A stretch of 64,000 nt of DNA from Caecitellus pseudoparvulus (GCA_965644315.1 CBFFRQ010000065.1:124001-188000); one strand, 5' to 3'; counted from the first letter of the stretch, positions 30,232-50,073 are shown. A program made the numbers and translations. Notes: generated from the letters alone by a model not told the origin.

Positions 30232-31757
30232 ATGGCAGCGCAGTGTGCTGTTATTGACAGCAGCGCTGGCGGCGCCAGCGACAAGGCAACTCAGTATTGC
30301 TCTCTTTTCGACGAGTTGTCGAGTGCCCATCTCAGCGGTGCATCCAGCGACTCTCTCAGTGCCATTGGCGAAGTGACGAAGCACGGTACGTTTGGCGTGG
30401 TGGTGCGGATTTCCACACCTCCATCGTTTTCTCAGAGCTCTGCCTGTTTGTGGTCCTCACCCCCTCAACCCACCCTCTTCACACAGTTGTGGATGCTAGC
30501 TTTCAAGTGTCCCGGCCGGTTCGTTAAGCGAGGCTTGTCTTCGCGCAGCACCGTGCCACCACCCCCGGATCCTCCGCAGGTGCTGGAGCACGTTTCGTCT
30601 TGGGTGAAGACTTCCATGGAGAAAGCTTCCAGTGAGGGGCAGGGGGACAGGGTTGAAGCACTGATCAAACTCGCGGAGGTGGTCGTTCGTGAGCTGGGGT
30701 CCCGGCAGTCCTCGTTCTTGGCGGCAGACTACTCCTTGCGAGAAGCTCTGTACGCTGGCTACGTTCATGTGGACAGCTCAGTGCAGGCTGCCTCGACTCT
30801 TGCGTGCGTGGGAAAGGGCCCTAGCGTGGGCAGCATTGCGGGTATATGTCATCACGCTTGCCATGGCGCTCCCTTCGCAGTGGCATGGACATCGAGGCTG
30901 TGGCGACTGCTGTGGGCATGGCAGATACAACCAAGGCCCTGGTGTACGTGCGCATTGCGCAGAATTACTTGCGAGCAGGGGATGACTACCACGCTGACGA
31001 GTTCATCCGGAAAGCCAACAGTGCGGGTGTGATGGAGTGCGGTGACCCCATGGTGGAGGTGCAGTTTCAAGTCTGCATGGGCTTTGTCCAGGATGCCCGG
31101 CGCAACTATGCGCAGGCTGCGGTCTGGTTCCACCGTGTGTCTACGGTGCAGCACGAAGGCGTGGATGCCTCTGAGTTAGAGACTCTTCTGCAACAAGCCA
31201 CAGTCAGTGCAGTGCTGTCCCCCCCCGGGCCAAGCCGGACCCGCATCCTCGACGTGGTCATGCGCGATGCCCGCACTGCGAGCCTGCCCACAGCCAGCAT
31301 GGTGGCAAAGATGCACAAGGGGCACTTTATCACAGCTGCGGACATCTCCAGCTTCAGTGAATTGCTCAAGTCTGAGCCAGCTAAGCTGGCGCCGGATGCA
31401 GATGGACTCAACGACGTGCAGAAAGCGGCGCGGCTTCACAACTTGGCAGCCGTGGCACGGGTGTACCGCAACATTTCCTTTGAGTCCCTCGGGCGGCTCC
31501 TTGGCGTGAGCGCCGAGGACGCGGAGGACCTGGCAGCACGCATGATCATGGAGGACCGCCTTGCCGGCACTATCGACCAAGAGTCAGGCACGCTGGAGTT
31601 TGCAAAGAGCGCCGATCCACTGCACACTTGGGATGCTCGTCTCACGGCTGCGACTGGTCACCTCAGCAGCGTCTCCGAGCGAATTGCAAGCAAGCATCCG
31701 TCTCTGGCTGAAGAGGCAGTGCACCGGGCAGCTTCGACAGACCCCACTCTTGAGTGA
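30232..31757 (+). CDS. CSN4: COP9 signalosome subunit 4 (PCI domain), spliced
   Basis: RQSSF...LREAL; YVRIAQNYL..DD; AVLSPPGPSRTRIL...RDAR; HNLAAVARVYRNISFESLGRLL...AEDLAARMIMEDRLAGTIDQ; HTWD. Confidence 0.9.
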
Positions 31758-31798
31758 AGCCTGTTGGTACGGCGAAGCAATGTACCCCGTGTCCTCGC

Positions 31799-32436
31799 TC
31801 ACTCTTGCGCTGTGGGAGAGGCGGCGTCCAGCGACTCCCCGAGCAGCTGAGCAACTCGCGCCATGATCGGGTCTTTGGCGGGGTCATAGGGACTCTCCTT
31901 GCTCGGTATCTCCAACACCGTCACATGGGTCTTCGGACCCTCACTTGAAGTGCTCAGTTCAGCTCCTGTGCCAACTGAGGAAAGAGCAAGGACACCGATG
32001 ATGCGGCGCTGCATGCGCGCCAAATGGAAGCCACTTACTCGCTCCTGAGGCCAGCATGACATGACGAATGTCATCTGCAATAGACTGGTTGATGAGGAGC
32101 AGTCCAATGTCATGCCGGTTGACGAAATTCGTGAACGTCTCCTCAATGTCCGTGCGCTTGGTCTCTGCACCAGGCAACGCAAGCGTAGCTGTGCGGCGGG
32201 TGCAGCCAGGGCTGGGGCGCTTTAGAGACGCACTAGCATCGACAACCATGAAATTCTTCTGATCATCCAGCGTGCAACCAATGCCTGCCAGCAAGAGCCC
32301 TGTCACAGTGTCCTGCACGTGCGGCGCATCAGTGTGGCGGGCGCGTGCGGAATTCGAGGGTGAAGCCGGTCCTCACTTCATCGCCAATCACGGCGATCAG
32401 CTTGTGCTCATCACCGAATGACCCATCAAATGCCAT
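31799..32436 (-). CDS. ATP6V1F: V-type ATPase subunit F, spliced
   Basis: KLIAVIGDE|[12 protein letters not shown]; NFMVVD; [27 protein letters not shown]; [18 protein letters not shown]. Confidence 0.95.
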
Positions 32437-33018
32437 GACACGGTGGATCTACTGTAACTTGGTTCGGAATCTCAGGCCAATTTGCCTCTTGCTGACTGCC
32501 TTGTGTCGTAGCAGCGTCGGCTCGAAGCGGTGCAGGTCGAGCGAACCATGCCACACAATGCTCGAGGGACTCTCTGCGAAACTGGCGCGATGCTACGTGC
32601 TGATGGATTATGCACTTTGAGGTGTGTGGGAGTGGCGATGTATGGCGCTCGGCCCTGACATGAATGGGGGGAAGAAGTGGCACCTTGCCAAGCCGGCGCA
32701 CCAGGCCACAGTGTCTGCTCATGCTCAAATCTGCACAACGCGTCAGGCTGGCACTGAAATGACCACTTTCACGCATGTCCAGTGGCCCGCTCCGGCTTGT
32801 GTTGCTTCTGCCTGCTTGGGGGGCAGTTCACCAAGCGCACACTTTGCCAAGTCGCTGTGCGACGGCTGACTTGTGCTAGCCGCCGCGTGTCGCGAGAGCA
32901 GCTGCTGCCGCTGGGGTTGCCCTTCCCCCTCGACACAATATTGGCCGTGCCTCGCTCTGCAAAGTGGCAGGCTTGGGCTTCATCCGCTCGCTGTCTCTAG
33001 GCTGCCGCATCCGTCACC

Positions 33019-36000
33019 ATGGCAACCAACGTATGTGGCACGCCATGCTGAGCTGCATTGCGACGTTGCCACCGACTGGCGCAGCCTCAAGGTGCCGGTT
33101 TACCCGGGTAGCTGCCTTGGGGGAGGCTGCCTGTAGCACGAGCTGCTGTGCGCTGCACGTCAGAGGCCGCTTCGTGCATCGTGTTGAGCAGCAACCGCCA
33201 CGCCACCTCCCCGCCTTCGGTCCTCTGTGCAGCATCGAGAAGTGGGTGTCGGGCTGGATGCCTCAGTCAACAAAGAGAAACGGTGCGTCCAGGGCTGCCG
33301 TGTGGGGCGTCCCAGCTGGTAGCCCCGGCGTCGGCATCGACCCGACAGCCGGAAACGCCGCCGCCTGCCTCCCTCGCACAGGTTCCCGCTGAACCATGTG
33401 ACTACCTCGCGCTACACGGCCATCTCATTTGTCCCCAAGAACTTATTCGAGCAGTTTCAGCGGGCGGCGAACGTGTATTTCCTCCTCATCTCGGTGCTGC
33501 AGGTGTGTGCTGCGCCATGGTCCACGGTCCGCCTGGCCTGGCACTGGCTCCCCCTCCTTCTCGGCGCAGGTTTCCACTGACCTCTCGCCCACGAACCGCT
33601 TCTCGACCATCCTCCCACTGATGGGAGTTATGTTGGTGTCCATGATCAAGTCGGCGATCGAGGACTGGCGTCGACACTCAGCTGATGCGCTGACAAACAA
33701 CGCCAAGGCAAAAGTGCTTCGTTCTGATGGCTCTGTAGACACAGTCCGGTGGCAAGACATTGCCGTCGGAGACGTCATTATCCTGCACGACCGAGAGTCT
33801 TGCCCTGCTGACTTGATCTTGCTTGCGTCATCAGACCCACGCGGGTCCTGCTTCATTCAAACACGCTCCATCGACGGCGAGACTAATCTGAAGCAGCGCA
33901 CCGCAGTCAGCTCAACGCAAGGCATCGCAGGGCCCACCATGCACCAGTACACCACTGTCGTGGGGCTCTCACTCTCCAGCACTCACATCCGCAGCCGTGC
34001 GACGACAGTTCCTGCACCCCGGCCCGAGATGCACGCAGAGACCGAGGCGGGCGATGGCGCTGTGGATACAGGGCCCGGGGGGGTCGTCCTGGACGACGCC
34101 CACTCCAACGTTGACGTGCCCAAGTACAACGCGCTGCTTTCTAAGCTAGGGCCAGCCTTGCCTGTGTTTAGCGGTGTGCTCAAGGTTGACATGCCGAACA
34201 ACGTACTGTATCAGCTGAATGGGCAGGCCAGCGTGCTTGCTCAGCCACGCACGGAGTACAACGAAGGCGTCCTCTCAGCCATTGCCCAGCCAACTGCGCA
34301 TCACGAAGATGACAGCGAGGGTGACACCCTGGACCAGCTCCAGCCGTCTCCCCTGGTTGCCGCCGCCACTCCCTCCAGGAGCCTCCCGCTTCCGCCTGCT
34401 GCAGGCTCAGCCTCGCGTCGCCGCGCAGGTGACCGCCCTGCCAAGAAAGACACCCTTAGCAGCTCTGCTACAGTTGGCAGCCGCACACCAGGGGAGCCGC
34501 TCGTCCAGGATGCGGGGCAGGGTGGTGGCGGGTTGGGCATCGTGCGCACCCGAGAGGCGGAGGGCGGCGTCGAGTTCGAGTACGATTCTGGCCTGCAGAG
34601 CATTGACAAAGACAACATGGTGCTACGTGGGACCATCATCCGCAACACGAAGCTGGTGCTTGGCGTAGCCGTGTACACTGGCCCCGAGACAAAGATTGTG
34701 ATGAACTCCAACGAGTCTCCCAGCAAGACCTCCCGCATTGACTCAATCGTGAATGGCAGCATGGTGGCCATTCTCTTCGCCTTGGTCGTCATTTGCACCC
34801 TTGCCACCCTCCTGGCGTCGGTCTTTGAGCAGCGCTCCGGCGCCGACCACGCGCCGTACTTGACGTTCTTGAGCGAGGAAGTGCACAGTGGGCGCAGCTT
34901 GCTTGGCATGGTGCGTCAGTGGGTCACCGCGCTCATTCTCTTCAACAACCTGGTCCCCATTTCTCTTTACGTTACTCTAGAGCTGGTGAGGTGGTTCCAA
35001 GCCCGGGGAATGGAGGCTGACACGGCTATGTGCGACGCCGATCGGAACCTACCCATGGTCAGTCGGACGTCAGACATCAACGAAGATCTCGGGCAGGTGG
35101 AGTATGTTTTCACAGATAAAACCGGGACGCTGACTCAGAACTCCATGATGTTCAAGATGTGTTCGGTGGGCGGGTTCGTCTACGGAGCGACACGCATGAA
35201 CGTCACCGTGTCCCGCAGAGCAGTAGTTCGAGGAACTGGGCGAACTTTGAGTGTCGGCTCAAAGGGCAGCGCACTGGGCGACAGCGCCGCCTTGACTTCA
35301 CCCTCCGGCGCTGGCGCCTCATCAGAGAGGTCAGTCGGCAGTGGAGGCTGGGTGGCAGGGGACGACTCTGGAAAGCGGGTGCACACACGCCTCCGTATTT
35401 CTGGACCGCAGCTGTCTAAATCTGCTCACTTGGCCTCATCTGCCAGCACGCCAGCAAAGCGAAGCACAACAGCGGGGGTGCTTCAGCTGCCGCAGGGCTC
35501 TACGAGCGTGACACAGTTGCAGTCGAGGACTTCCACAGACCGCCGGGCCCGGGGCCCAGCTCCCATTTTTGCCGTGCCAGAATCCGACAGCGATGCCAAA
35601 GCCCTCCCGGACGCGCTTCCTCCAAGGCCACGTCGATACGGCTCGACGGGGCGTGTGCCAGCCACGCTGTCGCCCACTTTCAGCGCGGATGCCCCTGCAT
35701 CTGAGCTCCCCGCCTCAGCCCCACACGCCGTTGATGCATCAAGTGGTGGCAGCGCTGGGAGGCAGTCAGGCCATGAATCGGATGGCTACCGTGTCACAGA
35801 TGAAGCTTTTGTCCTCGGCGAAGACGATCTTGATGGCTCAGATGACGACAGGGACCAGCACGGCTCCAGCTTTCGCAGGGGCAACGTGCCTGTGTTCGAC
35901 GTGGAAGTCACTCAAGATGTTGAAGTGATATCTGGGGATGACACACGCAGTGCCACCTCTCAGGGCAGGTCAGACCAGCCGCAGGGACCCCCGGTGCGTG

Positions 36001-39000
36001 GCAGCGATGAGGAGAGTGAGCGCTCCAGTCAGAGCCTTCCCGAGCCAGGTGATGGTGAGACTTCTTCTGTTTCGTCGGCTGTGCTCTCGGGGTCCTCTCG
36101 GTCAGGGCGCCACACTTCCATTCCCTTCACAAGGCAAGCTTCGCATGAGGCAGCTGGGGCAGACTCGCTTCCAGCAGCGTCAAACGTAGCGGCTGCAGGG
36201 AGGAGCTTGTCGGGCGTGCAGCACGCACAGTCGCTCCCTCATGCCCAGCAGGCCATTTTGAATTACTGCATGGCCAAGTATATCCCTGGTGGGTTCAAGT
36301 TTTTTGATCCCCGCTTGATGCTTCACTTGACGGCGGGAGATGTGCAAGCAGAAATTTTGGCGGAGTACCTGCTTTGCTGTGCTGTGTGCCACACGGTGGT
36401 CGCGGAGCGCCCAAATTCCGTGCAGCTAGGTGGCAGCGAAGGTGGAGAGCTTGAGTATCAGGCGGCCTCGCCGGATGAAGCGGCCCTGGTTGCAGCCGCT
36501 CGCGGGTTTGGGTTCGAGTACGTGGACAAGCGAGGTGATACCATCACGGTCAATGTGTTGGGAATCAGCCGCACGTTCACCGTGCTGGCGGTGAATCAGT
36601 TCACTTCTGCGAGGCGAATGATGTCTGTGCTTCTCCGCACACCGGAAGGTCGCACGGTGCTGTACTGCAAGGGGGCTGATCAGGCTATCCTGGACAGGCT
36701 GTGGATCAACAACCCTCACACGGTTCATGCCTACCAGCAACAAATGGAGGCACAGGCCATGGATGCCCAAGCCGCAGCAGCTGCAGCATTTGCTGCCGAG
36801 GAGGGCACAGAGGATGCAGCTCACCACTTTCGCCAGCCGAGCGTGGAAGCAGGCAGCGTGGGTGGCACCCCTCTTGACGCGGCTGATAAAGCTCGCCAGC
36901 ACAGCAGTGTAGTGCAGAGTATGCGCAACTTGCTGTCGACGGAAGGATTGCCATCTGCTGGAACCAGCGTGCAGGGGCCTGCCAGGACCAGCACGCTTGA
37001 GCGCAGTTTTTCTGCTGCCGGTGGCCTGACCCCCACAGCCGGTGCTGGGAAGGTCCACGGTTTCTTGACAACAAGCTTGGCAGGGCAGGCAGCAAGCGGC
37101 AGTGTTCCAAGTGGCGGGGATCAAGTCGCTTTGGCTGCGTCAATGACCCTGGCAGGTCAGAGCGAAGATGAAGGCAAAGCGCCGCAGCCCGTTCGGCCAA
37201 GCGCTGTGCAGCTTCAGAAGGGGATTGGCATCGCCAACCGGCCTCGGCGTGGCAGTCTTGATGCCGAGCAGTCCGCGGCCTCGGTTGGTGCGACATCTGG
37301 TGAGGCCACTGATGGCCCGCCGAGCACCTTCCAAGGCAAGGCCCCTGTCATGGCCATGCCACCCAGGACCACGTCAGAGCTTGACGTCTCTCGGTCAATT
37401 GCGAGCCCGTCCACTATTTCCACACCTGGCGGAGAGAGCTTGCCGGGGAGAGCCGCCATCGGCTCGTCCGCTGTGGGCATTGCAGCCACTCGCTTGCGAG
37501 TCGACACGCGAGCTGGCTTGTTTCCTGACACGTACTCCGATGGTGATGATGTGTCCACACCCGTGCACACTTCATCGCCCACTCGGGGAAAGGCTCCTGC
37601 TACGGCTGCATCAGCTGCACAACAGGTGGTGGACTCCTTGGAGGATCCGTTCTCCTATGATGGGGTGTTGGACTGGGAGCTGCAGCACGTTGCCCTCGTG
37701 GAGCGCCACTTGCGCGAGTTTGGCTTGGATGGCTTCCGCGTCATGGTTATGGCTAAGCGCGAAATTTCCCCAGAGACTGCTGAAGCTTGGCTCAGCATTC
37801 ACAAAGATGCCAGCGAGGCATTGGTGGACAGGGAAGCCAAGCTACTCAATGCCGCAGATAGCATCGAAAGCAACCTGACCATGCTTGGGGCGTCTGCAAT
37901 CGAAGACAAGTTGCAGAAGGGTGTCCCACGTACCATCGCGAACTTGGCTCGCGGTGGCATCCGCATGTGGATGCTGACTGGGGACAAAGAGGAGACCGCT
38001 GTGAATATCGGTGTTTCGTGCCGTTTGCTTCGTGATGACATGTCTGTGCTGATGATCAACGGCCAAACCAAGGAGGAGTGCATCTCTCAACTGGCGGCTG
38101 CGCGGGCTGAGCTGCGCTTCAAGAATCTGTGGGATCCGTCCAATGTGAATGAGAACTTGGCCCTTGTGCTGGAAGGAAGAGCCCTTCAGCATCTCCTCCC
38201 CCCCGACCAAGGTTTCTCTGGGTTCAAGAGTCAGCACTCTGGAAGCGGAGGCTCTTTGATTGCTTCAATTATCGGAGGCGTTGCTTCTTCCATGTGTTGC
38301 TGCGTGGGAAAAGGAAGTTCTGACGGAGACGCAGGTGCCGCGTATGTGGCGCACGACTTCATTTCCCCCCGGCAGTCTGCCTCACCCTCGCAGCCCAGCT
38401 CACGAAGCAGGCGACCAAGTCGTCGTAGCTTGATGGGTGACAGTGTACGGTCGCTGCAGAGTACAGCCCTCAGGTCTCGAAACAGTAGGCGCATTGTCGC
38501 GCAGGCACTGGCTCGCTCTTCGCACAACTTGCTGGGCATGCAGTACGACGAAGAAACTGAGGATGCCGCTGGGGCTGAGTCTGAGCTTTCCCAGTTTGGA
38601 ACTTGCGAGCTCATGGTGGCGTGGGTTCTGCTGTTCTTCATTGACCTGTGCTCCTCTTGCTGCTGCTGCTGCACGTGCTTCAACAGCGTTCTGGGGGAGA
38701 CCCCAGCCCCAGGCGGAGCGGCCCCAGGCTCTGTGTCATCTCGCAGCGTCATGGACGAAATGATTGGCGGCAGCATTGCCTTCTTTGCCGGGCGCAAGAG
38801 CTTTGAAGACGGAGAGACAGGGAGTGAAGTATCTGATGATACTTGGGGACACCAGTACGGCGACTCGGCATCCCAGGCCAGCCGTTCACAGCGCATGGGC
38901 TCTGCACTGTATGGCCAGGCTTCATGGCGGTCCAAGCCAGGGGCAGGCAGCACCTTCATTTCGTCTCGGTCCCTGGTGGACGTTCGCAGCGGCAGCACAG

Positions 39001-42000
39001 GCCGTGGGTACTCTGGTTCGGGGATGACAGGTCCCGCCCTTCGAACCTACGAGCGGGAGCTCCTTGAAATCGCCAGGCAGTGCAAGGCAGTTGTGGCATG
39101 CAGGTTGAGTCCCTTGCAAAAGGCTCAGGTGGTGCGGCTTGTGAAGCACGGCGTGTCACCTTCCCCGCTTACTCTTGCTATCGGCGACGGAGGCAATGAT
39201 GTCAGCATGATTCAGGAAGCTCATGTGGGCGTTGGCATTTCGGGCGTGGAAGGCATGCAAGCTGTCAGGGCATCTGACTTTGCCATTGGGCAGTTCCGCT
39301 TTCTGGAGCGCCTGCTTCTGGTGCACGGCCGGTACAACTACCAGCGCGTGGCGTTCACGATTTCGTACTCGTTCTACAAGAATGTTGCCCTGGTGTTGAC
39401 TCTTTTCTGCTTCACCTTTTTCAACGCTTTCTCTGGCGCGACTCTGTACGAGAGTTTTGTGGGCAGCATGTGGAACGTGCTCTTCACGGTGCTGCCAGTG
39501 ATCGTCGTGGGCATCTTCGATGAAGATGTGAACCCAGCCTCAGCCCTCGCTTACCCCGGCCTGTACCTACATGGTCAGCAGAACCGCAAGTTCAATGCTG
39601 GGCTCCTTGGCAACTGGATGGCGACAGCTGCTTGGCATGCTTTCCTTGTGTTCTTTGGCATGTACTTTGTGTGGCTGGTCCCAACCATTGCCACACAGGA
39701 CGGCCAAGTGTCCTCTCTGTGGTTCTCTGGTGCTGGGGTGAATCTTGCCTTGGTGCTGGTGGTGAACTTGAAACTCATGGTGGAAAGCCAGGTGTGGTCC
39801 AAGGTGGTGCTTGGTGCAGTTGCGTTCTCGTTGCTGGCCTGGGTGGGGTTCGTCGCGCTGTATGCAAGTTTGTACGCTCTCGGCCTCAACCTCATTGACA
39901 TCGTTCCCTTCCTCGGTGTCGGCACCCGCCTCTTGCAGACGCCCACGCTTTGGCTTTCAGCCATCCCTGTCGCGACTCTGGCAGTGTCCCTCGATGCCGC
40001 AAACGCATACTACAAGCGCTACTCCCGCCCGCAGCTTCACCACATTGTGCAGGAGTGGGCAGCAGGCTTCCCGGGCCGTCTGAGCCCCGATAGAGTTGCG
40101 AAGATTATCCGACGCATGCTGCTGTGGTACACGAACCCAGCGGCAGTGACACAGGAGCTGCGGCAGTCTGCGAAGCGAAAGCGGAAGGCTCTGGGCTTGG
40201 AGGAGTCGTCTGATGAGGAAGGTGAAAGTGGGCCTGGAGACGCGTACGCTCATGAAGCCTCCCGCTTGACAACTGCTGCGCCAGTGAAAGTGAACCCAGA
40301 CATCCAACTTCCATTCTCATCCTCCAGGCGTAGCTCATCTGATTTCCCGACAGTGACCTCGGCCTCCGATCGCACCACGACTTCAGACATGGCTGGTGAA
40401 GCCAGCCTGGTGGCTGGCAGCTTAGACTTCCGGGTGGCAAGTCATGTTTCTGGGACAGGCGCGAGCTTGCCGGCGGGAGCCCTCGCTCCCGGGCCGTTTC
40501 GAAGCGCAGGCCCAACTGGCTTGCCCCGAGTTCCAAGTGCAGTGGTCAGCAAGGCTGGGCCGCTGTCAGTCAGCAGGGTCCAGATTGGCAACCACATGGC
40601 CTTGTCTCGTATGCGGTCCATGGGGTCTCGCATGGCCCCGGGGCTCGGCCTGACGACCAGCCTAATGGACCACCAGCTGCCCGTTCGGGAGAGCTCTGTA
40701 GGGAGTCCTGCGTTTATGGGCATTATTCAAAGCAGCCAACCGGTACCCTGGTCGGAAGAGGAAGGCACGACTGCCAACCAGCCTTCTGGCGGGGATGGCC
40801 CAGTCATGCTGTCCACTCAACCCCATTTGCCACATGCCCACGATGGGGAAGGCGCGACGGCAGCATCTTCCGTTGGGACGAGGGAACAAACAGCAGACGA
40901 CCTACTGCCAGCACGCAGCATCCCAGGCACAAGTCGAACCACAGGCACGACGGGGACCACCCTGCAGGGCGGCCTGTCAGTGCGTTCCCCTGTCCTCCCT
41001 GCACATGATGAATTAGACGGTGCGCTATCTCCCCAGCCGCAACCTCAGTCTTCTATGACGTCAGCACAGCCTCAGGCTGCGCCGGTTATTCTTGAACCGG
41101 TTCCAGAGGCCGAACACGAAGGCCACGTGCGTCTGCTATCATCCTTGCGAGGGTCTGTGCTGCGGAACATGGAGCAGCAGTGGGTGGACGAGTATGCCAA
41201 CAAGTTGCGCCTCGAAAAGATTCGGGAACTACGAGCAGCCGAGAGCAAGAACAAGCGACGACGCTCGTCGGTGGCCCAGCTTGGCAAGTCCATTCGCCGC
41301 CTCTTCACTCGGCGCAATGTTTACGAGGACGAGGATGCATCCCCGCGGCGCTCCGGAGGCCTCGGGGGCAGCTCTGAGTTCACACACAGTAAGCGAACAG
41401 GGACGTTGCTGCTGAGCCCAGTAGGCGCGCCGACTGCATCCAAGCGCAGCTCAACTGGCGGCAAGGCCGGAGTATCAAGCCCAGCGGCTGGGCATGTGGC
41501 TTCCCCAGCTGGGGATGCAGCGGGCATGTTCGGCTCTGCGACAGGCTTCGACGTTTCAGACGACTCTGGTCGTGGCCGCGCGCAGTCCTCCCCATTCAGA
41601 TCAGCCTCAGGAGGGCTGCAATCAGATGCGTCCCGTCCTCGAGCTGTGACAGAAGCTGCAGGATTGTCTCAACCTGCGGGTGCCATGCCATCCACGCGGC
41701 GGGCGTCCGATGGCACTTCAACGTCGCACGCTCTGGACAAGTTGGTGGATGCGACGGTGGATGATGCAAGTGTCACGACACTGGGAACTTCGGCTGTCTC
41801 AGAGCACACACCGTCACATGCTGCCCCTCGCTCTGCGAAGTCTGGGGGCACTGCTCATGGCACCTCTGAGAGCGGAGGCAGCAGCGAGGGGCCAGCTGCT
41901 TCGGAAGAACGGAGTGAGCTGGCGTCTTCTGGCGCAGAGCAAAGGCGCAAGCGCCCAGGAGTGTCCCCCCTTGTGCTGCGCACGCACTCAGGAGACTCTG

Positions 42001-45000
42001 ACACGTCAGGCAGTGCGCCAATTGGCCCCCTGTCGCCCACAACCGGCCTGCCCATCAAGAGCATATTACGCAAGCCCCAAGCATCATCACACAGCCAAGG
42101 AACTGGTCACAGCAGCCACTTCGCTGCCAACCCATTTGACGTCGATGGCTATGCGCAAGCTGCCGCCACGGTCAGCCCTGCCACAGGCAAGGCAACGGCC
42201 TTCGCTGCCGCTGGTGCCGCCGGGTCTGCCTCCAGCTCTGTGCCAGAGTGTGAGACGCCCGAAACAAGCATGTCACCGGCGCACAAGGGCAACCGGTATG
42301 TGCGAGCAAGCAGTGCAGCTTCGGGGGACTCTCAGTCTCTCATGGGCATGGCGCTTGTGACGGACACGATGACTGAGCTGAGTGTTTCCGCTCGAACTGG
42401 CTTGACGAGTCAGGGGGGCCAGGAACCCAGCAGTCGGCCGCTGGCCCGGCGACACCAGCCAGCTTCTCAAGGATCAGGCATCGCTTTGGCTCGCAGTGGG
42501 TCTGTGGGCCCTGATGGGCAGCACCGCGCCGAGTCTGTCACGACATCTGCACGTGGGGGCAGCATGGGCACCTTCCGGGGTGGGGGCACGAATCGCCTTA
42601 CCAGCAGCATTCTGAGGTCTACGACTCTCTCGCAGCCTTCCTCTACGGCAAAGGGGCGCAAGGCGTCGTTCTGGGAGGACTCCTTCGCCATTTACTACAT
42701 GACCAACACCATGCACGGTGTGGGAGGCGTGTCTGCTGGGCCGAAGCCGTTGATTTCCAAGATTTCACAGCGCTTCGTGAACAACAGACGGCTGGAGTCT
42801 CAGTACCAGCGTAAATACTTCGCGCCACGGGGAACCCTCCAGCTTCAGTACCTGCTCACCCTTGGCCACATCCTGTACACTGCCTTCACCGTGTTCGAGC
42901 TTGTTGCTGGGTACCGACACCCCCAAACTGAAGAGTTGGTATATGTCTCCTCGGAGGCTGCAAGTATTTCGCTGTTCTTTGAGTTGCACATCTTCCGCAT
43001 GGTGTCATGGGCCATTCTTATTGCGTTGCATTTGCTCACCCTGACGAAGGAGTTTCAGCGTCGATATGAGGTGTACATGCTGCTCAGCAGCCTGTCCTTT
43101 GGCTTGCTCTTCCTCTTCCTCGGGACCAGTGAACTCACCACGCGCGTTGTCATTTTCCTCATGGCGTTGTTCCTTGTGCTCCGTGTGCAGTTCACCCATG
43201 CGCTGGCTGTCGGCATTACAATCAGTCTCGTGACACTCATCATGACGCTGACAAACTCAGGGGGTGACCCTTCTGGTGGGTTTAGCTTCGCAGTGTCAGC
43301 TATCCTCTTCATCGGCTTCTTTGGCTACTCCGCGTACAGCTCGGGCTTGAACATGCGCCGTGACTTTGCTCAGCAGGGCACACTGCGGCTGGAGCAGCGC
43401 CGAGCAAACCGCATTCTGTCCAACACCATGCCCCCACATATCACCCAGCGCATCTTGAAGGGCATGGCGTCGGGATGGGCCAGTGTGAAGCCTGTCAGCC
43501 AGGCTGCCGCCGTCACGGTAAAGGACAGTCCCGGGGTCGGCGACCCAGCGCCCATGGCGCCTGTTGCTGAGCGGGAGACGGCATTGGGCGAGGACTCAGA
43601 GCATGGTGAGAGCTCGGGGCGCAGGCATGCCCCTCCACCCCCAAAACGACGAGCCCCCCCCGCCTCTCCAGGCTCTGGACTCTCGGTGTCTGTGGCAGGG
43701 GCTGCTGTTGACATGATGGATGATAGCGAGCCCGTCGCAACGGAGCTGGTCACCCCGTCGCACCGCCGCAACACCTCCAGCTCAACCTTTGCTAGCATGG
43801 GCCGGGCTCTTTCGCAGCCATCTGGCGAAAAGCTTCCCCTGGCATCCAGTAACCGCACGATCAGTTCCATGCGCTCCATGCTTGGGCAGTCATCCAGAGC
43901 TACGAGTCGAAAGAGTCGCCCCAGGGACCCCAAAGCCCCCCCACTTGCCTTGTTCGTCGATGAAGAGCCTGCAGTGTCGGTGTTGTTCGTGGACCTGCAA
44001 GACTTTCCTGTGATCGTGCAGCGTCACACGCCATCTCAGCTTGTGGGTGTGCTGGACTCTCTGTACTCGCTGTTTGACGTGCTAGCTTCAAAGCACCGCG
44101 TGTACAAGGTCGAGAGCGTGGGGAAGACTTGGATGGCTGCGGCGGGTTTGAGCCAGTCGCGCCCTGACCATGCAGCGGCGTGCATAAACTTAGCGCTGGA
44201 CATCTTGGACCACATCGTTCAGATCCGGAACATTCACGGCGAGCAATCTTTCCACGTGAAGGTCGGAGTGAACTCGGGCGCGCTTGTGACTGGAGTCGTC
44301 GGCTTGAAGAAGCCGCAGTTCTGTTTGTTTGGTGACACCGTGAACACCGCTTCCCGCATGCAAAGCACGGGAGTGTACAACCGGGTCCACATCAGTCCCT
44401 CCACTCAATCCGAAGTGCAAGGCTTGTACGAGCTGGAACCTCGCAAAGTCCAGGTGAAGGGAAAGGGGGAAATGTCCACGTATTTGGTGCGAGGGCCTGT
44501 GGATGGCCCGCTGCCTACGCACGTGCAACGCATGGACCAGAAACAGGAAGCAGAGAGGGCAAAAGCCCAGCTAGAGTCTACATTGGTGGACACAGCTCGC
44601 TCTTCTGTGGGTACAGGCGGTGTTGCTTCTGGTCGCCTACAGAAGAGCCCTGTCAGGCTTCCGAGGCAGGGGGTCGCTGGCATCGGCACTGTTGAGGAGG
44701 ACGCGCCAGCTCCGAAACACTTCACAGCCGCGCTTCGCATTGACACGGGCTCGACTGTGCGCGGTGCCGACAAGGCTCCTCGCAGCGAGTCGTATGAAGG
44801 TGTAGACACGAGTGACAGCAAGGGGCTGGCGCCACTGGGCGTGGCAGGGGGATCACCTGCCCGACGCCGGGTTCACTCCAGCAGTGGGCCAGGTGGTGAC
44901 AGCCCAGCACACAGTTGTGAGACACCTGCAGAGGATGAGAGTGCGAGCTTGAAGATCAAGCACTTGCCTGGCTTTGTAGGAACCCCTGTTGCCTCTGACT

Positions 45001-47432
45001 CAACCGGTCCGGGAACCCCTCCTCACGCCACAGGCGCTGACAAACAGAGCATGGTTCCAATCGAGTCCCCCCTTGCTCGGCCGATGCATGGTTTACACTC
45101 CTCTGGAAGGAAGGCCTCGCGGGATCTTACGCCTTCTGGGCAGTCGGGCATTTCCGCCCCCTTTGCGTTGCCCCCCACACACACGCCCTTGCAGCACGCT
45201 GCAACTATTGGCACTGCCTCAGTGCCTCGTGGTGCTGGTGGAGGGGCAAGCGGCAGGTCCCGCCACTCAGCTGCGACGTTGATGATGGCAGGGTCCGCGC
45301 TCGGAGCTGGAAGCAGCGTTACAATGCCGGGACCAGCCCGCCCTCGACCTTCGTATAGACGAGCGAGTATTGGGCTTGCTGCCACCGCTGGCCGCATTGG
45401 CACTGCGGAGTCGACTGGCACGAGCCCCAAGTCGGGCCTGAGCTCCGACCAAGAGCAAGACATCGCCACACAAGCACAGCAGTTCCTGAAGGAAAAGCAG
45501 CGGGCTTGGAAGAAGGATGAGGAGGCTCAGCTTGAAAAGAATTTGCAGAACATGGCTGAGCGTGTGGAAATGAGACCGCTGCTGCAGACCTTCAAAGACC
45601 CGGAGCTTGACGCAGCATACTGGCTTGCGACCACAGCGAAGCGAGTCCGGCGAACTCGCGTGGTCGTGGCTTTCCTTGCCTTCCTCTTCTTCTACCGAGC
45701 AGTCGAGGAGGCGCTGGCTGCCGAGTCGGACCTTTCCATTCGCACTGTCGGCCTGCGCCTGATATTCACGGGCATCGGGCTGGTGTTTTTGTTCGCATCT
45801 TCCCGCATGCGGCACCAAGCGGTGCGGGGCACCGTGCCGCAGTGGTTCTGGCTGCTCTCGTACATTATGATGGTGCTTGGGGGCTGCGTCCTCGTGGCCA
45901 CCCAGACGACGCTGCCCATCGCGACCATGGACATCATGCTCTTCTGCACTCTCTCATCCAATGGCCGCATGCTGTCCGTCCTGACTTCCACAATGCTGAA
46001 TGCTGCTGTGGTCGTGGCAAGCACAGTAGTGGGCTTCACTCCCACCGCCAGCACGACCCTGTCCATCGACATTGAAGAAGACGGCTGGCAGCTCGTCTTC
46101 TACTGGTATGCGGCGCTTGCAATTACCGCCATGTCTGCCAGCAGCACCGAGTACTACATGCGCCGCGGGTTCGGCTTGGGTGTGCTCACACGGGAGCAAA
46201 CTGCCTACGCGGAGCGCCTGCTGTACCAGATGCTGCCCAGGGCAGCTGTGTCACAGCTCAAGGAGGGCCGCACTGGCGTGTCCGACTCGTACCGCGGCGT
46301 GACACTGTTGTTCATGGACTTGTGCGGCTTCACCAAGATGTCGGCGGCTCTGCGCCCCGCGCAGGTGGTGTCCATGCTCAACGCGCTGTTCACTGAATTT
46401 GACCAGCTCACGGACAAGTACCGTGTCATGAAGGTGCAGACCATTGGCGATGCGTACATCGCCGTCGCTGGCCTGCCCTTTGATGACACTATGAGCGGGA
46501 CCTGGGCTTCTCAGGCAGCCCCGCAGTCATCGCTGGGGCCACCCCCTCCGCTGTCTGGGCGGCCTGAGGTGTACTCGGGGCGCCTGCCATCCACAAGGAG
46601 GAAGCCTCGCCCCCTGGCCCGGGCCGGCACCTTCAGCAGTATGCGGTCGCAGGACTCGTCCAGGCCCATTTCACCTGCCCCAGCCCCCCTTGCATCCCCC
46701 AGCTCGGGGGGACAGCCGGGTGGCAGCTTGGTGGACTACAGCGCCGTGGCGCGGGACATGACTACCGAGGAGCGAGGCATGGTACAAGCTTCCCAGCTGC
46801 GCTCGCTGTCCATCGCACACTCAATGCCCGCCCGAGAAGGGTCTTCGCACTCGGACACGAGCCAGCACCATGCCGCATCAGGCGATGCCTTTACCATGTC
46901 ACAGGCATCCCTTGACTCTCCCGTCCGAGCCATGCGCGCTGACCGGGCCCGAAGGCTGTCACGGCTGCAAACATTGACAAGTGTCCGGGACTTGTCCAAC
47001 GCCCGAACTAGGGACACCGCACGTTCAGCTGGCGTTGCAACTGCCCGGGCAGGCCAGTTGGACGACGTGAAGAAGAACGCAGAGACGATGCTGAAGATGG
47101 CGCTCAGCATGCAGAAAGCTGTGAAGCGGGTGACGAACCCTGCCACAGGGCAGCCACTGAAGATGCGCGTCGGCCTGCACACCGGAAACATCATCGCTGG
47201 CGTGATTGGGACGCGCACCCTGCGGTATGACATGTGGGGCGCCGATGTCTTGGCAGCAAATCTCATGGAAAGCCATGCCGAGCACGACGGCATCCTCGTC
47301 AGCGAAGTCACGCGGGATGCGTTGCAGCATGTGCCAGGCATTCAGTTCGAGGCTGGCGACCGTGTGGATGTCAGCGGCATGGGTGAGCTGAACACCTTCC
47401 ACGTGAGGGGTAATCTTCACCGGCTCATCTAG
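33019..47432 (+). CDS. P4-type ATPase (flippase)-guanylyl cyclase fusion, about 4,681 aa; exons 33019-33030, 33233-33282, 33382-33502, 33570-47432
   Basis: Spliced N-terminus MATN|HREVGV...EK|RFPLNHVTTSRYTAISFVPKNLFEQF. P4 motifs IDGETNLK, LVPISLYV, FTDKTGTLT, YQAASPDEAALV, CKGAD, AIEDKLQ, WMLTGDKEETA, CRLSPLQK, AIGDGGNDVSMIQEAHVGVGISG, SFYKN. These are followed by a TM bundle, class III cyclase domain 1 (~43960-44495), a second TM bundle and cyclase domain 2 (~46270-47420). Confidence 0.95.
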
Positions 47433-47755
47433 CGAAGTAAACCCTCCACAATACATGCATGAAACCTGGTCTTGCCTGCTGCCCAGCGGGAGCCATCCGC
47501 TGTGTCGCTGTGCATGCGTGGGGGCTGGTGGCGCGATGTGTAGCTGTTCAAAACTCGCGTCACCCACTGTATGCAGTCTGCGCAGCATCTTGTGCCAGAT
47601 TTACTTGCTGTCGCTTGCGAATAGCTGGCCGGGTGCTTGGCCACGCCAGCTCCTCGGCAGACCAGAGCGCCTCTCAGCACGGTTGTGTTTCCGCCTGGGG
47701 AGCGCAGAACCGCCCCAGCTGATTTCCTAGCACATTTTCGTACATAAAGCTTGAG

Positions 47756-48577
47756 ATGCTTCGTTTCTCTCTCGCTCTGCTGACTGTCTGGGCTGTGGCA
47801 GCGTCGGCATCTGCTTCGTAAGTTCCGCACTGCCAAGCTTGCCACGCGTCATGGCCACTCCCGCCCTGCCTGCCGCCTGCTTCCAGCGCTGACATTGCTG
47901 GCAAGATTCTTCACCTCCCAAAAGAGGTTCTCTCCATCTCATTGAATGGTGGGGAGCGCTTGACAACGCCAGCAGCCTCAGGGCTGTTCACGTTTCATGC
48001 TGTGGCTCCTGGTCTGCACCGCCTGGAGATTGAAAGCCACAAACTCGTGTACCCTCACTACGTGGTCGAAGTGAGCGAGTCAGGAAGGACCAAAGTAAAG
48101 GAGTTCCATTATCCAGGGGCTCCGCCAATCGCACTGCAGAGCGATGTCATCCAAATCAAAGCGGTAGCACCCGTGACCTACTACAGAGCTGCTGCCTCCT
48201 TCAACCTGGCCTCCTTGCTCATGAACCCCACTGTCATCATTCTCCTCGTCATGGTGGCCGCCATGGTCTTCCTGCCGTCGATGATGGAGAATATGGACCC
48301 TGCTCAAAAGGAGGACATGCGCAGGCAGCACGAAGCCATGAGCAACCCAGCTGCCCTGCTGTCGGGCGGTGGCGCCCCCCAAGACATGGGCTCCCTCATG
48401 TCCATGCTAACCGGCGAGACCCCTGCACCTGGTTCGGCCCAAGCAGACTCTGGCCCTCCTGTGGACCCGTATGAGCATGCCGCAAGCAAGGTCGGCGGAG
48501 GCAGTGGCCGCAGCTCCCGCCGAGCGCCTCAGGCCGCACCTGGTGTTGGCCGAAAGGGCAAAGGCAAGCGCCGCTGA
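47756..48577 (+). CDS. EMC7: ER membrane protein complex subunit 7-like
   Basis: Signal-peptide exon MLRFSLALLTVWAVAASASA followed by a GTAAGT donor. Lumenal beta-sandwich (LNGG...GLFTFHAVAPG.H.LEI), then APVTYY...FNLASLLMNP, a TM segment and LPSMMENMDP. Confidence 0.85.
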
Positions 48578-48603
48578 GGTGACATTGCGGCAGAGCATTG
48601 CAT

Positions 48604-49686
48604 TCAAGCAGCCAGTCCAAGCTTCAGGGCGGTAACTACACCACCAAAGTGCGTGCCGTAGTCCTTCGCCATGTCCAGCTCGCCTTCCAGGGGCTGCGCG
48701 GACCCGTCCGCACCTGCCAGCGTCCCTGGCCCGTAAGGCGAGCCGCCGTGCGCCTTGGAGTTGTCGAACTGGATGGCAGGCGAGCCGTACCCGTGGGGCA
48801 CGTAGATCATGCCGTGGTGGGTGAACTGCGGGGTGGGGGCGCAAGGTCGGGCTCAATGCAGCAACATGCAGGCAAAGTGGGGTGTCGGGCGTGGGTGGTC
48901 GGCGTCTCACCTGTGTGACGGCTGTGAGGGCGGTGGTCTCCTGCCCGCCACCCTGGGTGGCCGTGGAGAAGAACAGACCTACAGGCTTCCCCCTGAGGGC
49001 GCCCTTCTGCCAGTGGCCACCGGTGGCATCAAAGGCAGCCTTCAATTGAGCAGCGATCATGCCGAAGCGGGTGCCACACTGCGAAGTGTGTGGGGGGATC
49101 GTGTGGTGGGAGGCTGCAAGCTAGCCACATCCGCACTGCGTGCCGCACCCCAAAGATTATGCCATCGTAACTTGGAAGTGTAGTGATGTCCAAGTCCTCG
49201 TGGTCACCGCCTTTTGGCGGGGCATGCATCTTCTCCAAGACTGCGGGGGGGGGCGGCAGGCCAACGCTTCCGGAAACCAGCGACACGGCAAGCTGCGTTG
49301 CTCGACGCCATACCTTCCTCAGGCAGCGTTTCTGAGATGCGCTTCACGTCCACCTCCACACCAGAGGCTTCCAGGCCAGATACTACTGCACCAGCCAGCG
49401 TCTTTATGTGGCCGTACATGGAGTAGTAGGCCACAAGCACCCGGGCTTTCGCTTTCGTTTCCAGCTGAGTGCCACTGCCTGTTGCCGCGTCAGGTGTGGA
49501 GGGGGAGCCAGCTTGGCCGACAGCCACATCACCAGCTTGTACAGGTTCCGAACTCCCTGAGGTCTGGCTCATTTCAGGAGCTGCAGGTTCCGGGGCTTGG
49601 GCCTGCTGTGGCGTGGGCTCGCCTGGTGCCTGAGGGGGAGCTGGGCTTGGCGCGAGCGCTGCTTGTTTGGAGCCACCGCAGCCCAT
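48604..49686 (-). CDS. WrbA/FQR1-type flavodoxin-like NAD(P)H:quinone oxidoreductase with N-terminal MGCGGSK acylation motif; spliced
   Basis: VAYYSMYGHI, SETLP, YDGIIFG, TRFG, FDATGGHW, STATQGGGQETT, HHGMIYVP, GGSPYGPGTLAG.DGS.QP. Confidence 0.93.
48645..49034 (-). repeat. Left arm of a 390-bp inverted repeat (partner 50585-50974)
   Basis: Ungapped reverse-complement match covering the 3' exons and an 85-nt intron with 5 mismatches. Confidence 0.93.
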
Positions 49687-49813
49687 GCTTGAGCGTGAAG
49701 GTGGAGGGGGGCGAAGGAATCAGCTTTTATATCGTGTGCGTGTGTGTGGGTGCCAGTCGTACTGAAGATGGAATGTTGTGGGCAGGAAATTGGTCGTTCT
49801 GAGGAGAACGTGA

Positions 49814-49823
49814 GTGACGTCAC
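49814..49823. promoter_or_regulatory. Palindromic CRE/ATF-like element GTGACGTCAC in the divergent promoter of the two WrbA-like genes
   Basis: Perfect 10-bp palindrome in the 387-bp interval between the two start codons. Function is inferred only. Confidence 0.35.
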
Positions 49824-50073
49824 GCAAATTCCGCTCCTGTCAGGGGGATGGAAGGGGGCCTGGAGGGCCCCTCGCGCACTGACCAGCACAACTGCCAGTT
49901 CCATCAAATACAAAACGTTGCCCCCAACCCCCGACCGCTTGCCCATGTCTCCAAACTGTACGCACACACGGCTTTCATTCAAGTCCTACACACGTGCCTC
50001 ACAGCTCGCCGCTCTCAACACGCCGCAGGCATTGCACTCGCATCGTCACTGCTCCTTAGCCTCCCTCGACACC

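What the first reader, a model, noticed from the sequence alone, without database searches (positions are those of the whole stretch)
33019..47432. Giant flippase-guanylyl cyclase chimera with an intact P4-ATPase catalytic core in an apparently non-alveolate flagellate
Seen: one 13.9-kb exon joins a complete P4-ATPase to a TM-cyclase-TM-cyclase module. The phosphorylatable Asp of DKTGT (35115), DGET (33873), PISL, TGDK and GDGxND are all intact. Established: this architecture is characteristic of alveolates (Paramecium, Tetrahymena, Plasmodium GCalpha/GCbeta, Toxoplasma GC) and has been noted in oomycetes. There it couples lipid or ion cues to cGMP and works with a CDC50 partner. Inference: the neighbouring genes point to a flagellated stramenopile-type protist. 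This would extend the lipid-sensing cGMP device to another lineage and favour a SAR-ancestral fusion with a probably active ATPase.
Basis: partly seen in the sequence, partly recalled or inferred. Interest (0 to 1): 0.8.

Follow-up and report, generated by a model that had tools for sequence, protein, structure and literature searches.

The report
Flippase–guanylyl cyclase fusion in a bicosoecid-like flagellate
This is a real, intact gene for a giant two-in-one membrane enzyme, a lipid flippase joined to a cGMP-making cyclase, in a free-living marine flagellate, but a July 2026 paper already reported this fusion from the same group of organisms, so it is a well-preserved new example and not a new discovery.

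Summary
One frame stays open from 33429 to 47432 (4,667 codons). It encodes a complete P4-ATPase, a roughly 940-residue linker, and a 6TM-cyclase-6TM-cyclase module. With three short 5' exons the model is 4,681 aa.

DGET, PISL, DKTGT, TGDK and GDGGND are all canonical. The cyclase halves are inverted as in known flippase-cyclases (P4GC). They carry a complete GTP-type site: Glu/Cys, Asn, Arg and two metal Asp.

Both halves fall inside the P4GC clades, with oomycete and unnamed marine sequences. An AU test rejects an alveolate affinity (p 0.00016). The host looks like a bicosoecid-like stramenopile.

The genome also holds one CDC50 gene and three PKG-type kinases.

The novelty claim fails. Wiser 2026 (PMC13466520) already reports P4GC in oomycetes and three bicosoecids, including a Caecitellus genome that may be this one, and proposes the same ancestral fusion.

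Small additions here:
- a full gene model;
- an intact DGET glutamate, where that paper lists Gln in Cafeteria;
- a P4GC in the haptophyte Diacronema lutheri, which that paper does not list.

The scan's index holds no earlier P4GC finding on other DNA.

The parts
33019..33030 (+). Putative exon 1 (ATG GCA ACC AAC), followed by a GTATGT donor
   Evidence: Read from the sequence. The relative's locus has an equally tiny ATG exon with a GTAAGT donor upstream of the conserved exon 2. Tentative.
33233..33282 (+). Exon 2 (HREVGVGLDASVNKEK-R), cytosolic N-terminus
   Evidence: Length, phase and both splice sites (cag|CATCG ... G|GTGCGT) are conserved in relative L038.
33382..33502 (+). Exon 3: FPLNHVTTSRYTAISFVPKNLFEQFQRAANVYFLLISVLQ, the P4-ATPase N-terminal signature and TM1
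   Evidence: 73% identity to P0004 residues 58-97. Conserved in L038.
33570..47432 (+). Exon 4: 13,863 nt, 4,620 codons plus stop, encoding the rest of the flippase, the linker and the whole cyclase module
   Evidence: No splice joints in RNA-library contigs over 39000-44999.
33873..33884 (+). A-domain DGET dephosphorylation motif, Glu intact
34956..34967 (+). TM4 PISL lipid-path motif
35115..35129 (+). P-domain DKTGT with the phosphorylatable Asp
37977..37988 (+). TGDK motif
38292..38678 (+). P-domain insert with two hydrophobic Cys-rich segments (MCCCV; CELMVAWVLLFFIDLCSSCCCCCTCF)
   Evidence: Hydropathy scan. Both are conserved in P0002. Possible S-acylation sites; this is inference.
39183..39200 (+). 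GDGGND hinge motif
39264..40031 (+). PhoLip_ATPase_C region, TM5-TM10 of the flippase
   Evidence: Pfam 240 bits. Six hydrophobic segments.
40032..42851 (+). Ser/Ala/Gly-rich variable linker of about 940 residues between flippase and cyclase
   Evidence: Composition. Only 12-55% identity to the nearest relative in 40-residue windows. Partly covered by metatranscriptome contigs, with no joints.
42852..43334 (+). First cyclase membrane block (about 6 TM)
   Evidence: Hydropathy scan.
43968..44492 (+). Cyclase domain 1. It resembles mammalian AC C2 and carries the purine-specifying Glu (VESVG, 44109) and Cys (FCLFG, 44319) plus the Asn and Arg of TVNTASRM
   Evidence: Pfam. Alignment to AC5 C2 shows Glu opposite its substrate Lys and Cys opposite its Asp. 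Column check.
45660..46034 (+). Second cyclase membrane block (4 segments above threshold; 6 expected)
   Evidence: Hydropathy scan.
46284..47408 (+). Cyclase domain 2. It resembles mammalian AC C1, has both metal-binding Asp (LFMDLCGFT at 46305, QTIGDAY at 46437) and is split by an insert of about 190 residues (46482-47057)

Best explanation
The gene encodes one polypeptide of about 4,681 residues and about 22 transmembrane segments, of the P4-ATPase/guanylyl-cyclase (P4GC) family. It is vertically inherited in a free-living, bicosoecid-like stramenopile flagellate. The C-terminal module folds like a mammalian membrane adenylyl cyclase with its two halves swapped. Domain 2 supplies the two metal-binding Asp. 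Domain 1 supplies the Glu/Cys purine-recognition pair and the Asn/Arg transition-state residues. Together they form a single GTP-specific active site that makes cGMP. The genome's three PKG-type kinases probably read that cGMP. The N-terminal module keeps every residue needed for the P-type phosphorylation and dephosphorylation cycle and for the P4 lipid path. It therefore probably cycles as a real flippase, most likely paired with the genome's single CDC50 subunit. Its conformational state or its lipid cargo is expected to control the placement and activity of the cyclase, as in Toxoplasma and Plasmodium. Shown here: the architecture, motifs, phylogeny and the presence of partner genes. Inferred: enzyme activities, CDC50 pairing, coupling between the halves, and the biological output (perhaps flagellar or feeding behaviour).
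For: A continuous ORF with Pfam domains for both modules. All five flippase motifs are canonical. Domain 1 aligns to AC5 C2 with Glu replacing the substrate Lys and Cys replacing the Asp, and with Asn/Arg kept. Domain 2 aligns to AC8 C1 with both Asp kept. Each cyclase domain falls in an all-P4GC clade (99* and 97*) that excludes the genome's other cyclases. The flippase module falls in a 96* clade with oomycete and environmental P4GCs; the concatenated tree agrees. The fusion and its synteny are conserved in a relative that is 45% identical overall. Contigs from three metatranscriptome libraries lie on the linker and both flanks, with no joints. The genome has one CDC50 gene and three proteins with three cNMP-binding domains plus a kinase domain. 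Published work shows that the flippase Asp and CDC50 are needed for P4GC function in apicomplexans (PMC13466520 section 3.1).
Against: No activity data exist for any stramenopile P4GC. About 57% of the protein lies in poorly conserved Ser/Ala/Gly-rich inserts, some inside the A, N and P domains, and these could impair cycling. The RNA evidence is fragmented contigs from libraries that may contain DNA, and no single contig spans the linker. CDC50 binding was not tested. The host is placed only indirectly.
Confidence: 0.62

Rival explanations
1. Same protein and same cGMP output, but the flippase module no longer transports lipid. It serves only as a targeting, scaffolding or sensing module for the cyclase.
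For: This view is often proposed for P4GCs and is favoured in PMC13466520 section 3.1. Relatives in the same clade have degenerate DGET motifs: P0034 has DGAT and P0018 has LSGDM; the paper lists Gln in Cafeteria. Large inserts sit inside the A, N and P domains. The genome has six other P4-ATPases that could do bulk flipping.
Against: In this protein every catalytic and lipid-path motif is canonical, and the core windows are 80-100% identical to the nearest relative. That is not expected if catalysis were dispensable.
Confidence: 0.25
2. The long ORF yields two separate products, a flippase and a cyclase, through internal transcript ends, an internal promoter or proteolytic cleavage in the linker.
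For: No single RNA contig spans 40032-42851. There are coverage gaps at 41400-41800 in run X10. The linker is long and poorly conserved.
Against: The frame stays open for 4,667 codons. The fusion is conserved in every family member, including a relative only 45% identical overall. No joints or clustered molecule ends were seen. Separating the modules harms Plasmodium, as cited.
Confidence: 0.06
3. The cyclase makes cAMP or both nucleotides, not specifically cGMP.
For: The Pfam family covers both activities. The best PDB scores are to adenylyl cyclases. Specificity was read from two residues only.
Against: Glu and Cys occupy the positions of the AC Lys and Asp. This is the canonical pair of guanylyl cyclases (my own knowledge of the family). 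Other P4GCs in the alignment carry E/S or E/A at these two positions.
Confidence: 0.05
4. The gene is alveolate in origin: the host is an alveolate, or the gene was recently transferred from one.
For: The family is best known from alveolates. Chromera gives 49% identity over the flippase C-terminus.
Against: The AU test rejects grouping with alveolate P4GCs (p 0.00016). Alveolates are monophyletic without it in all trees. No alveolin match in the genome. The 18S matches the Caecitellus probe site at 15 of 18 bases. GC content, introns and synteny are native.
Confidence: 0.02

Closest known systems
Stramenopile P4GC (oomycetes; bicosoecids Cafeteria roenbergensis, C. burkhardae and Caecitellus pseudoparvulus), Wiser 2026, PMC13466520
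   Same: The same single-chain flippase + 6TM-C1-6TM-C2 cyclase. Large disordered loops, as reported for bicosoecids. It groups with oomycete P4GCs in both halves. The N-terminal exons would be missed by TBLASTN, which fits the paper's report of a missing N-terminus in two bicosoecids.
   Different: DGET keeps its Glu here, whereas the paper lists Gln for Cafeteria. At about 4,681 aa it is nearly twice the oomycete size of about 2,600-2,770 aa. The cyclase pair is E/C, against E/S in Phytophthora. Whether this genome is the paper's Caecitellus assembly could not be settled.
Apicomplexan guanylyl cyclases (the coccidian and Plasmodium P4GCs sampled here; Toxoplasma TgGC and Plasmodium GC-alpha/beta from the literature)
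   Same: Architecture, inverted catalytic halves, giant inserts, and a CDC50 gene in the genome.
   Different: A separate alveolate clade. E/A instead of E/C in Besnoitia and P. relictum. The apicomplexan partner UGO and the microneme and gliding outputs have no known counterpart here. The host is a free-living bacterivore.
Ciliate P-type-ATPase guanylyl cyclases (Paramecium, Tetrahymena), the founding members
   Same: Domain order and swapped C1/C2 roles (from my own knowledge of the 1999 description and).
   Different: Tetrahymena and Paramecium have degraded flippase motifs, whereas this one is intact. No ciliate sequence was in my trees.
Mammalian membrane adenylyl cyclases (AC5, AC8, AC9; PDB 8sl3, 8buz, 7pd4)
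   Same: 6TM-catalytic-6TM-catalytic topology and a pseudo-heterodimeric single active site.
   Different: The halves are swapped. E/C replaces K/D. There is no flippase module.
P4A flippases with CDC50 (yeast Dnf1, used as the modelling template in PMC13466520)
   Same: All signature motifs and ten TM segments.
   Different: Fused to a cyclase. About 1,200 extra residues are inserted in the A, N and P domains.

Membership tests
P4GC (P4-ATPase/guanylyl cyclase chimera) | [quoted passage not shown] | tested here: met
   One ORF with PhoLip_ATPase_C (240 bits) and Guanylate_cyc (329 bits).
P4GC (P4-ATPase/guanylyl cyclase chimera) | Cyclase part built as 6TM-C1-6TM-C2 | tested here: met
   Two catalytic domains, each preceded by a block of hydrophobic segments. 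Only 4 of the second 6 pass my hydropathy threshold.
P4GC (P4-ATPase/guanylyl cyclase chimera) | Catalytic halves inverted relative to mammalian AC (first domain C2-like, second C1-like) | tested here: met
   Domain 1 lacks the second metal Asp (GKT) and carries the specificity, Asn and Arg residues. Domain 2 has both Asp.
P4GC (P4-ATPase/guanylyl cyclase chimera) | Both halves descend from the family's ancestral fusion | tested here: met
   Domain 1 clade 99*, domain 2 clade 97*, with the genome's own non-fusion cyclases outside. The flippase module lies within the P4GC group. Caveat: a non-fusion paralogue on contig C68 branches beside the stramenopile P4GCs with support 87.
P4GC (P4-ATPase/guanylyl cyclase chimera) | One transcript and one protein across the junction | tested here: inconclusive
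   RNA-library contigs lie on 28 of 30 bins of 39000-44999 with no joints. They are fragmented and may include DNA.
P4GC (P4-ATPase/guanylyl cyclase chimera) | Produces cGMP | not testable with these tools
   Only the E/C specificity pair and an intact catalytic set can be read from the sequence.
Catalytically competent P4-ATPase | DKTGT Asp, DGET Glu, TGDK, GDGxND and PISL in TM4 | tested here: met
   All canonical.
Catalytically competent P4-ATPase | A CDC50 beta-subunit available and bound | tested here: inconclusive
   One CDC50 gene in two exons at G000:C13:418.9-420.4 kb. Binding was not tested.
cGMP signalling pathway | A cGMP-dependent kinase effector | tested here: inconclusive
   Three proteins with three cNMP-binding domains plus a Ser/Thr kinase domain (C13:624 kb, C88:151 kb, C13:341 kb). 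Their cGMP versus cAMP selectivity was not examined.
Host = bicosoecid stramenopile (Caecitellus-like) | 18S and gene-tree affinity | tested here: inconclusive
   The published Caecitellus probe CET1 matches the 18S at 15 of 18 bases, against 0.01 expected by chance. The Cafeteria probe does not match. The P4GC trees put the gene on the stramenopile side. The CFAP57 and ATIC searches found no named close relative. No full 18S database comparison was possible.

The most novel reading that the evidence does not exclude
The flippase-cyclase fusion is older or more mobile than the published 'stramenopile + alveolate' picture. The haptophyte Diacronema lutheri carries a complete P4GC in one 8.9-kb ORF on a native-looking 562-kb contig, and both of its halves fall inside the P4GC clades but inside neither the alveolate nor the stramenopile group. 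The window's gene would then be the best-preserved free-living stramenopile copy, with every catalytic residue of both enzymes intact, one CDC50 gene and three PKG-type kinases in a compact 30.6-Mb genome. That would make this organism a good place to test whether the flippase cycle gates cGMP synthesis.
Probability: 0.3. Interest if true: 0.5.

Novelty: new member of a known kind. Interest (0 to 1): 0.25.

Why it matters
P4GCs control egress, motility and invasion in malaria and Toxoplasma parasites, yet how the flippase half controls the cyclase half is unresolved. Parasite proteins are hard to work with, and several have degraded flippase motifs. A free-living bacterivore with a small genome and a fully intact P4GC, a single CDC50 gene and PKG-type kinases could serve as a comparison system. 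It also adds one data point, with its unnamed marine relatives, to the question of when the fusion arose. The central claim has already been published, so the added value is incremental.

Tried and rejected
The CFAP57 search gave the same organism, one 81% relative and one 48% relative, all unnamed. After that came a mix of Rhodelphis, Vitrella, Rhodomonas and Saprolegnia at 36-40%. The ATIC search gave unnamed hits at 62-63%, then diatoms and many unnamed hits at about 52%. Neither placed the host, and no hit was named Cafeteria.
- **Other identification routes.** The listing of cluster members gave no organism names for the nearest P4GC relatives. A paper search for the Caecitellus pseudoparvulus genome found only Wiser 2026, and that paper's supplementary tables are not held. 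I therefore could not check whether this exact gene is in its Table S1.
- **18S probes.** The Cafeteria probe has no match within three mismatches.
- **Alveolate origin.** Rejected by the AU test. No alveolin match in the genome (weak negative evidence).
- **A second, reversed fusion on contig C42.** The two-domain cyclase gene is directly followed by a P4-ATPase gene. The cyclase ORF ends in TAG, with an AATGCA hexamer about 120 nt downstream, and the ATPase has its own start and introns. Neither gene belongs to the P4GC clades.
- **Motif clue to Cafeteria.** None of the retrieved relatives has the 'DGQT' that the paper reports for Cafeteria.
- **Steps not run.** No CDC50-flippase complex prediction, because CDC50 is spliced and I make no binding claim beyond inference. 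No search for UGO or SLF-like partners, because no tool-given reference sequence was available.
Full report
**1. Observation**

The + strand carries one frame open from 33429 to 47432, 4,667 codons. At the local 60% GC a random frame would meet a stop about every 31 codons. The chance of none in 4,667 codons is about 1e-66.

Pfam finds four P-type/P4-ATPase families, including PhoLip_ATPase_C at residues 1946-2201. It also finds the class III cyclase domain at 329 bits in three stretches. PISL, TGDK and GDGGND are also present.

A hydropathy scan gives the expected layout. TM2-4 and TM5-10 belong to the flippase. One block of about six segments precedes cyclase domain 1. A second block precedes domain 2, with four segments above my threshold.

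**2. Gene model**

TM1 is not in the long frame. It lies in a short exon at 33382-33502, whose translation is 73% identical to residues 58-97 of homologue P0004.

Reading the DNA gives GT-AG introns at 33031-33232, 33283-33381 and 33503-33569. The exons are 33019-33030, 33233-33282, 33382-33502 and 33570-47432, which sum to 4,681 codons.

The locus of a related species (L038) keeps exon 2 with the same length and phase and the same splice sites. It also keeps exons 3 and 4, and has a tiny ATG exon with a GTAAGT donor. Exon 1 remains tentative.

Every search used exon 4 or a single exon by reference. The only DNA I joined in a script was two adjacent genome stretches, L024 and L032.

**3. Is it one product?**

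- Run X10 covers 28 of 30 bins. Its contigs lie at 40052-40973, 41049-41357, 41966-42229 and from 42274 past the end of the stretch.
- No joints, indels or clustered molecule ends were reported.

This fits an unspliced, continuous message. However, the contigs are fragmented, none spans the whole linker, and such libraries can hold DNA. I rate transcript continuity as likely but not shown.

The stronger argument is comparative. Every family member keeps the fusion, including relative P0002/P0315. That relative is 76-83% identical in the conserved cores but only 45% identical end to end.

**4. What the two halves look like**

*Flippase.* All five signature motifs are canonical. Relatives in the same clade show decay: P0034 has DGAT and P0018 has LSGDM.

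*Cyclase domain 1.* It aligns to the C2 half of AC5.
- Its VESVG Glu lies opposite the substrate-binding Lys.
- Its FCLFG Cys lies opposite the Asp.
- The Asn and Arg of TVNTASRM are kept.
- The second metal Asp is absent (GKT).

*Cyclase domain 2.* It aligns to the C1 half of AC8, keeps both metal Asp, and is split by an insert of about 190 residues.

So the halves are swapped, as in known P4GCs, and they form one complete GTP-type site. The E/C pair is shared with P0002, P0004 and Diacronema. Phytophthora has E/S, and Besnoitia and Plasmodium relictum have E/A.

*Variable regions.* About 57% of the residues lie in 40-residue windows under 50% identical to the nearest relative. These Ser/Ala/Gly-rich stretches sit in the A, N and P domains, the linker, the stretch between domain 1 and the second membrane block, and domain 2.

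**5. Phylogeny**

A word search restricted to long proteins returned the following:
- the same organism (P0001);
- a 74% relative (P0002);
- several unnamed marine sequences;
- many oomycetes at 41-45%;
- chromerids, dinoflagellates, Perkinsus and coccidians;
- Plasmodium relictum;
- one haptophyte protein.

*Flippase-module tree* (44 rows, 1,062 columns). Alveolate P4GCs form a 100* clade. The window's protein sits in a 96* clade with oomycetes and eight unnamed sequences.

*Catalytic-domain tree.* All P4GC first domains form one clade (99*) and all second domains another (97*). The genome's other cyclases fall outside both.

*Concatenated tree.* It gives the same picture. The window groups with P0002 and P0029 (100*), inside a seven-member clade (98*) that is sister to oomycetes (91).

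*AU test.* It rejects uniting the window's group with the alveolates (p 0.00016). The group was fixed after I had seen the tree, but the hypothesis was stated beforehand.

The two halves therefore share one history, on the non-alveolate side.

**6. Host**

The genome is 30.6 Mb in 215 contigs.

- The published FISH probe for Caecitellus (CET1, from PMC9303649) matches the 18S on the expected strand at 15 of 18 bases, where 0.01 matches are expected by chance. The Cafeteria probe does not match.
- No alveolin domain was found in the genome.
- CFAP57 in the window shows the organism is flagellated.
- Earlier notes of this scan call the organism bicosoecid-like. I used them only as leads.

I conclude that the host is a bicosoecid-like stramenopile, possibly Caecitellus. 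I could not prove this.

**7. Pathway context in the genome**

- One CDC50 gene, in two exons.
- Seven P4-ATPase genes, of which only this one is fused.
- At least six loci with cyclase domains.
- Three PKG-type proteins, each with three cNMP-binding domains and a kinase domain.

**8. Comparison with what is known**

Wiser 2026 (PMC13466520) searched for exactly this chimera.

- It reports the chimera in all alveolate lineages, in 30 oomycete species and in three of four bicosoecid genomes: Cafeteria roenbergensis, C. burkhardae and Caecitellus pseudoparvulus.
[quoted passage not shown] A TBLASTN search would give that result with the small 5' exons found here.
- It notes large disordered loops in bicosoecids.
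- It proposes a fusion in the stramenopile-alveolate ancestor, with horizontal transfer as the alternative.

What differs:
- The paper lists Gln for the DGET Glu in Cafeteria, whereas this protein keeps Glu.
- The paper states that no other eukaryotic group has P4GC and never mentions haptophytes.
- Diacronema lutheri protein P0023 (3,120 aa) has the full architecture. One ORF of 2,955 codons spans both modules on a 562-kb contig with uniform 71% GC.
- Both of its halves lie inside the P4GC clades, but inside neither the alveolate nor the stramenopile group.

**9. Verdict**

I file it as a new, or possibly already listed, member of a known kind, with low-to-moderate interest.

Noticed in passing
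L037:8001-18059 (Diacronema lutheri GCA_019448385.1, JAGTXO010000025.1): A haptophyte carries a complete P4GC (P0023, 3,120 aa). One 2,955-codon ORF spans flippase and cyclase, the GC content of 71% matches its neighbours, and the protein has DGES, DKTGT and an E/C pair. PMC13466520 states that no group outside stramenopiles and alveolates has P4GC. In my trees both halves fall inside the P4GC clades but inside neither the alveolate nor the stramenopile group.
   Followed up: partly
G000:C42:125327-136566 (L024 + L032): A 1,948-aa two-domain cyclase gene is followed about 400-800 nt later, on the same strand, by a P4-ATPase gene with a 1,527-aa open frame. They are separate genes (stop codon, then an AATGCA hexamer, then a new start with introns), and neither belongs to the P4GC clades. 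With 7 flippase genes and about 6 cyclase genes in 30.6 Mb, this adjacency is unlikely by chance. It may reflect a second functional link between the two enzyme types.
   Followed up: partly
P0056 (EukProt EP01012, Entosiphon sulcatum transcriptome): A euglenid protein of 2,550 aa combines a P4-ATPase, MORN repeats and two cyclase domains. Its flippase module falls outside the P4GC clade. It could be an independent fusion or a transcript chimera.
   Followed up: no
window 38292-38306 and 38586-38678: The P-domain insert holds two hydrophobic, Cys-rich segments (MCCCV; CELMVAWVLLFFIDLCSSCCCCCTCF). Both are conserved in the nearest relative P0002 although the surrounding insert is not. They may be S-acylated membrane-dipping elements.
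   Followed up: partly
G000:C68:791377-795654 (L022, minus strand): A non-fusion P4-ATPase of the same genome (1,426-aa frame) branches as sister to the stramenopile P4GC flippase modules (support 87) and not with the other paralogues. It is either the unfused member of the same subfamily or a copy that lost its cyclase.
   Followed up: no
L038 (Logan SRR8862141 contig) versus window 30800-50000: The relative that is 45% identical overall keeps the gene order PCI-domain gene, V-ATPase subunit F, P4GC, FMN reductase (WrbA-like). Its ATIC homologue has a copy on a contig of the same length (134,357 nt) as one that carries its P4GC, which suggests synteny over tens of kilobases.
   Followed up: partly
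window 40400-41270: DNA run X1 shows clusters of mostly transition differences at about half depth in the linker (for example 40934-41264). This suggests two haplotypes or strains that differ mainly in the variable linker, with no indels.
   Followed up: no
G000:C13:624079-626469 (L034:1580-3970, minus strand): One of the three PKG-type kinases begins with a WW domain ahead of its three cNMP-binding domains and its kinase domain.
   Followed up: no
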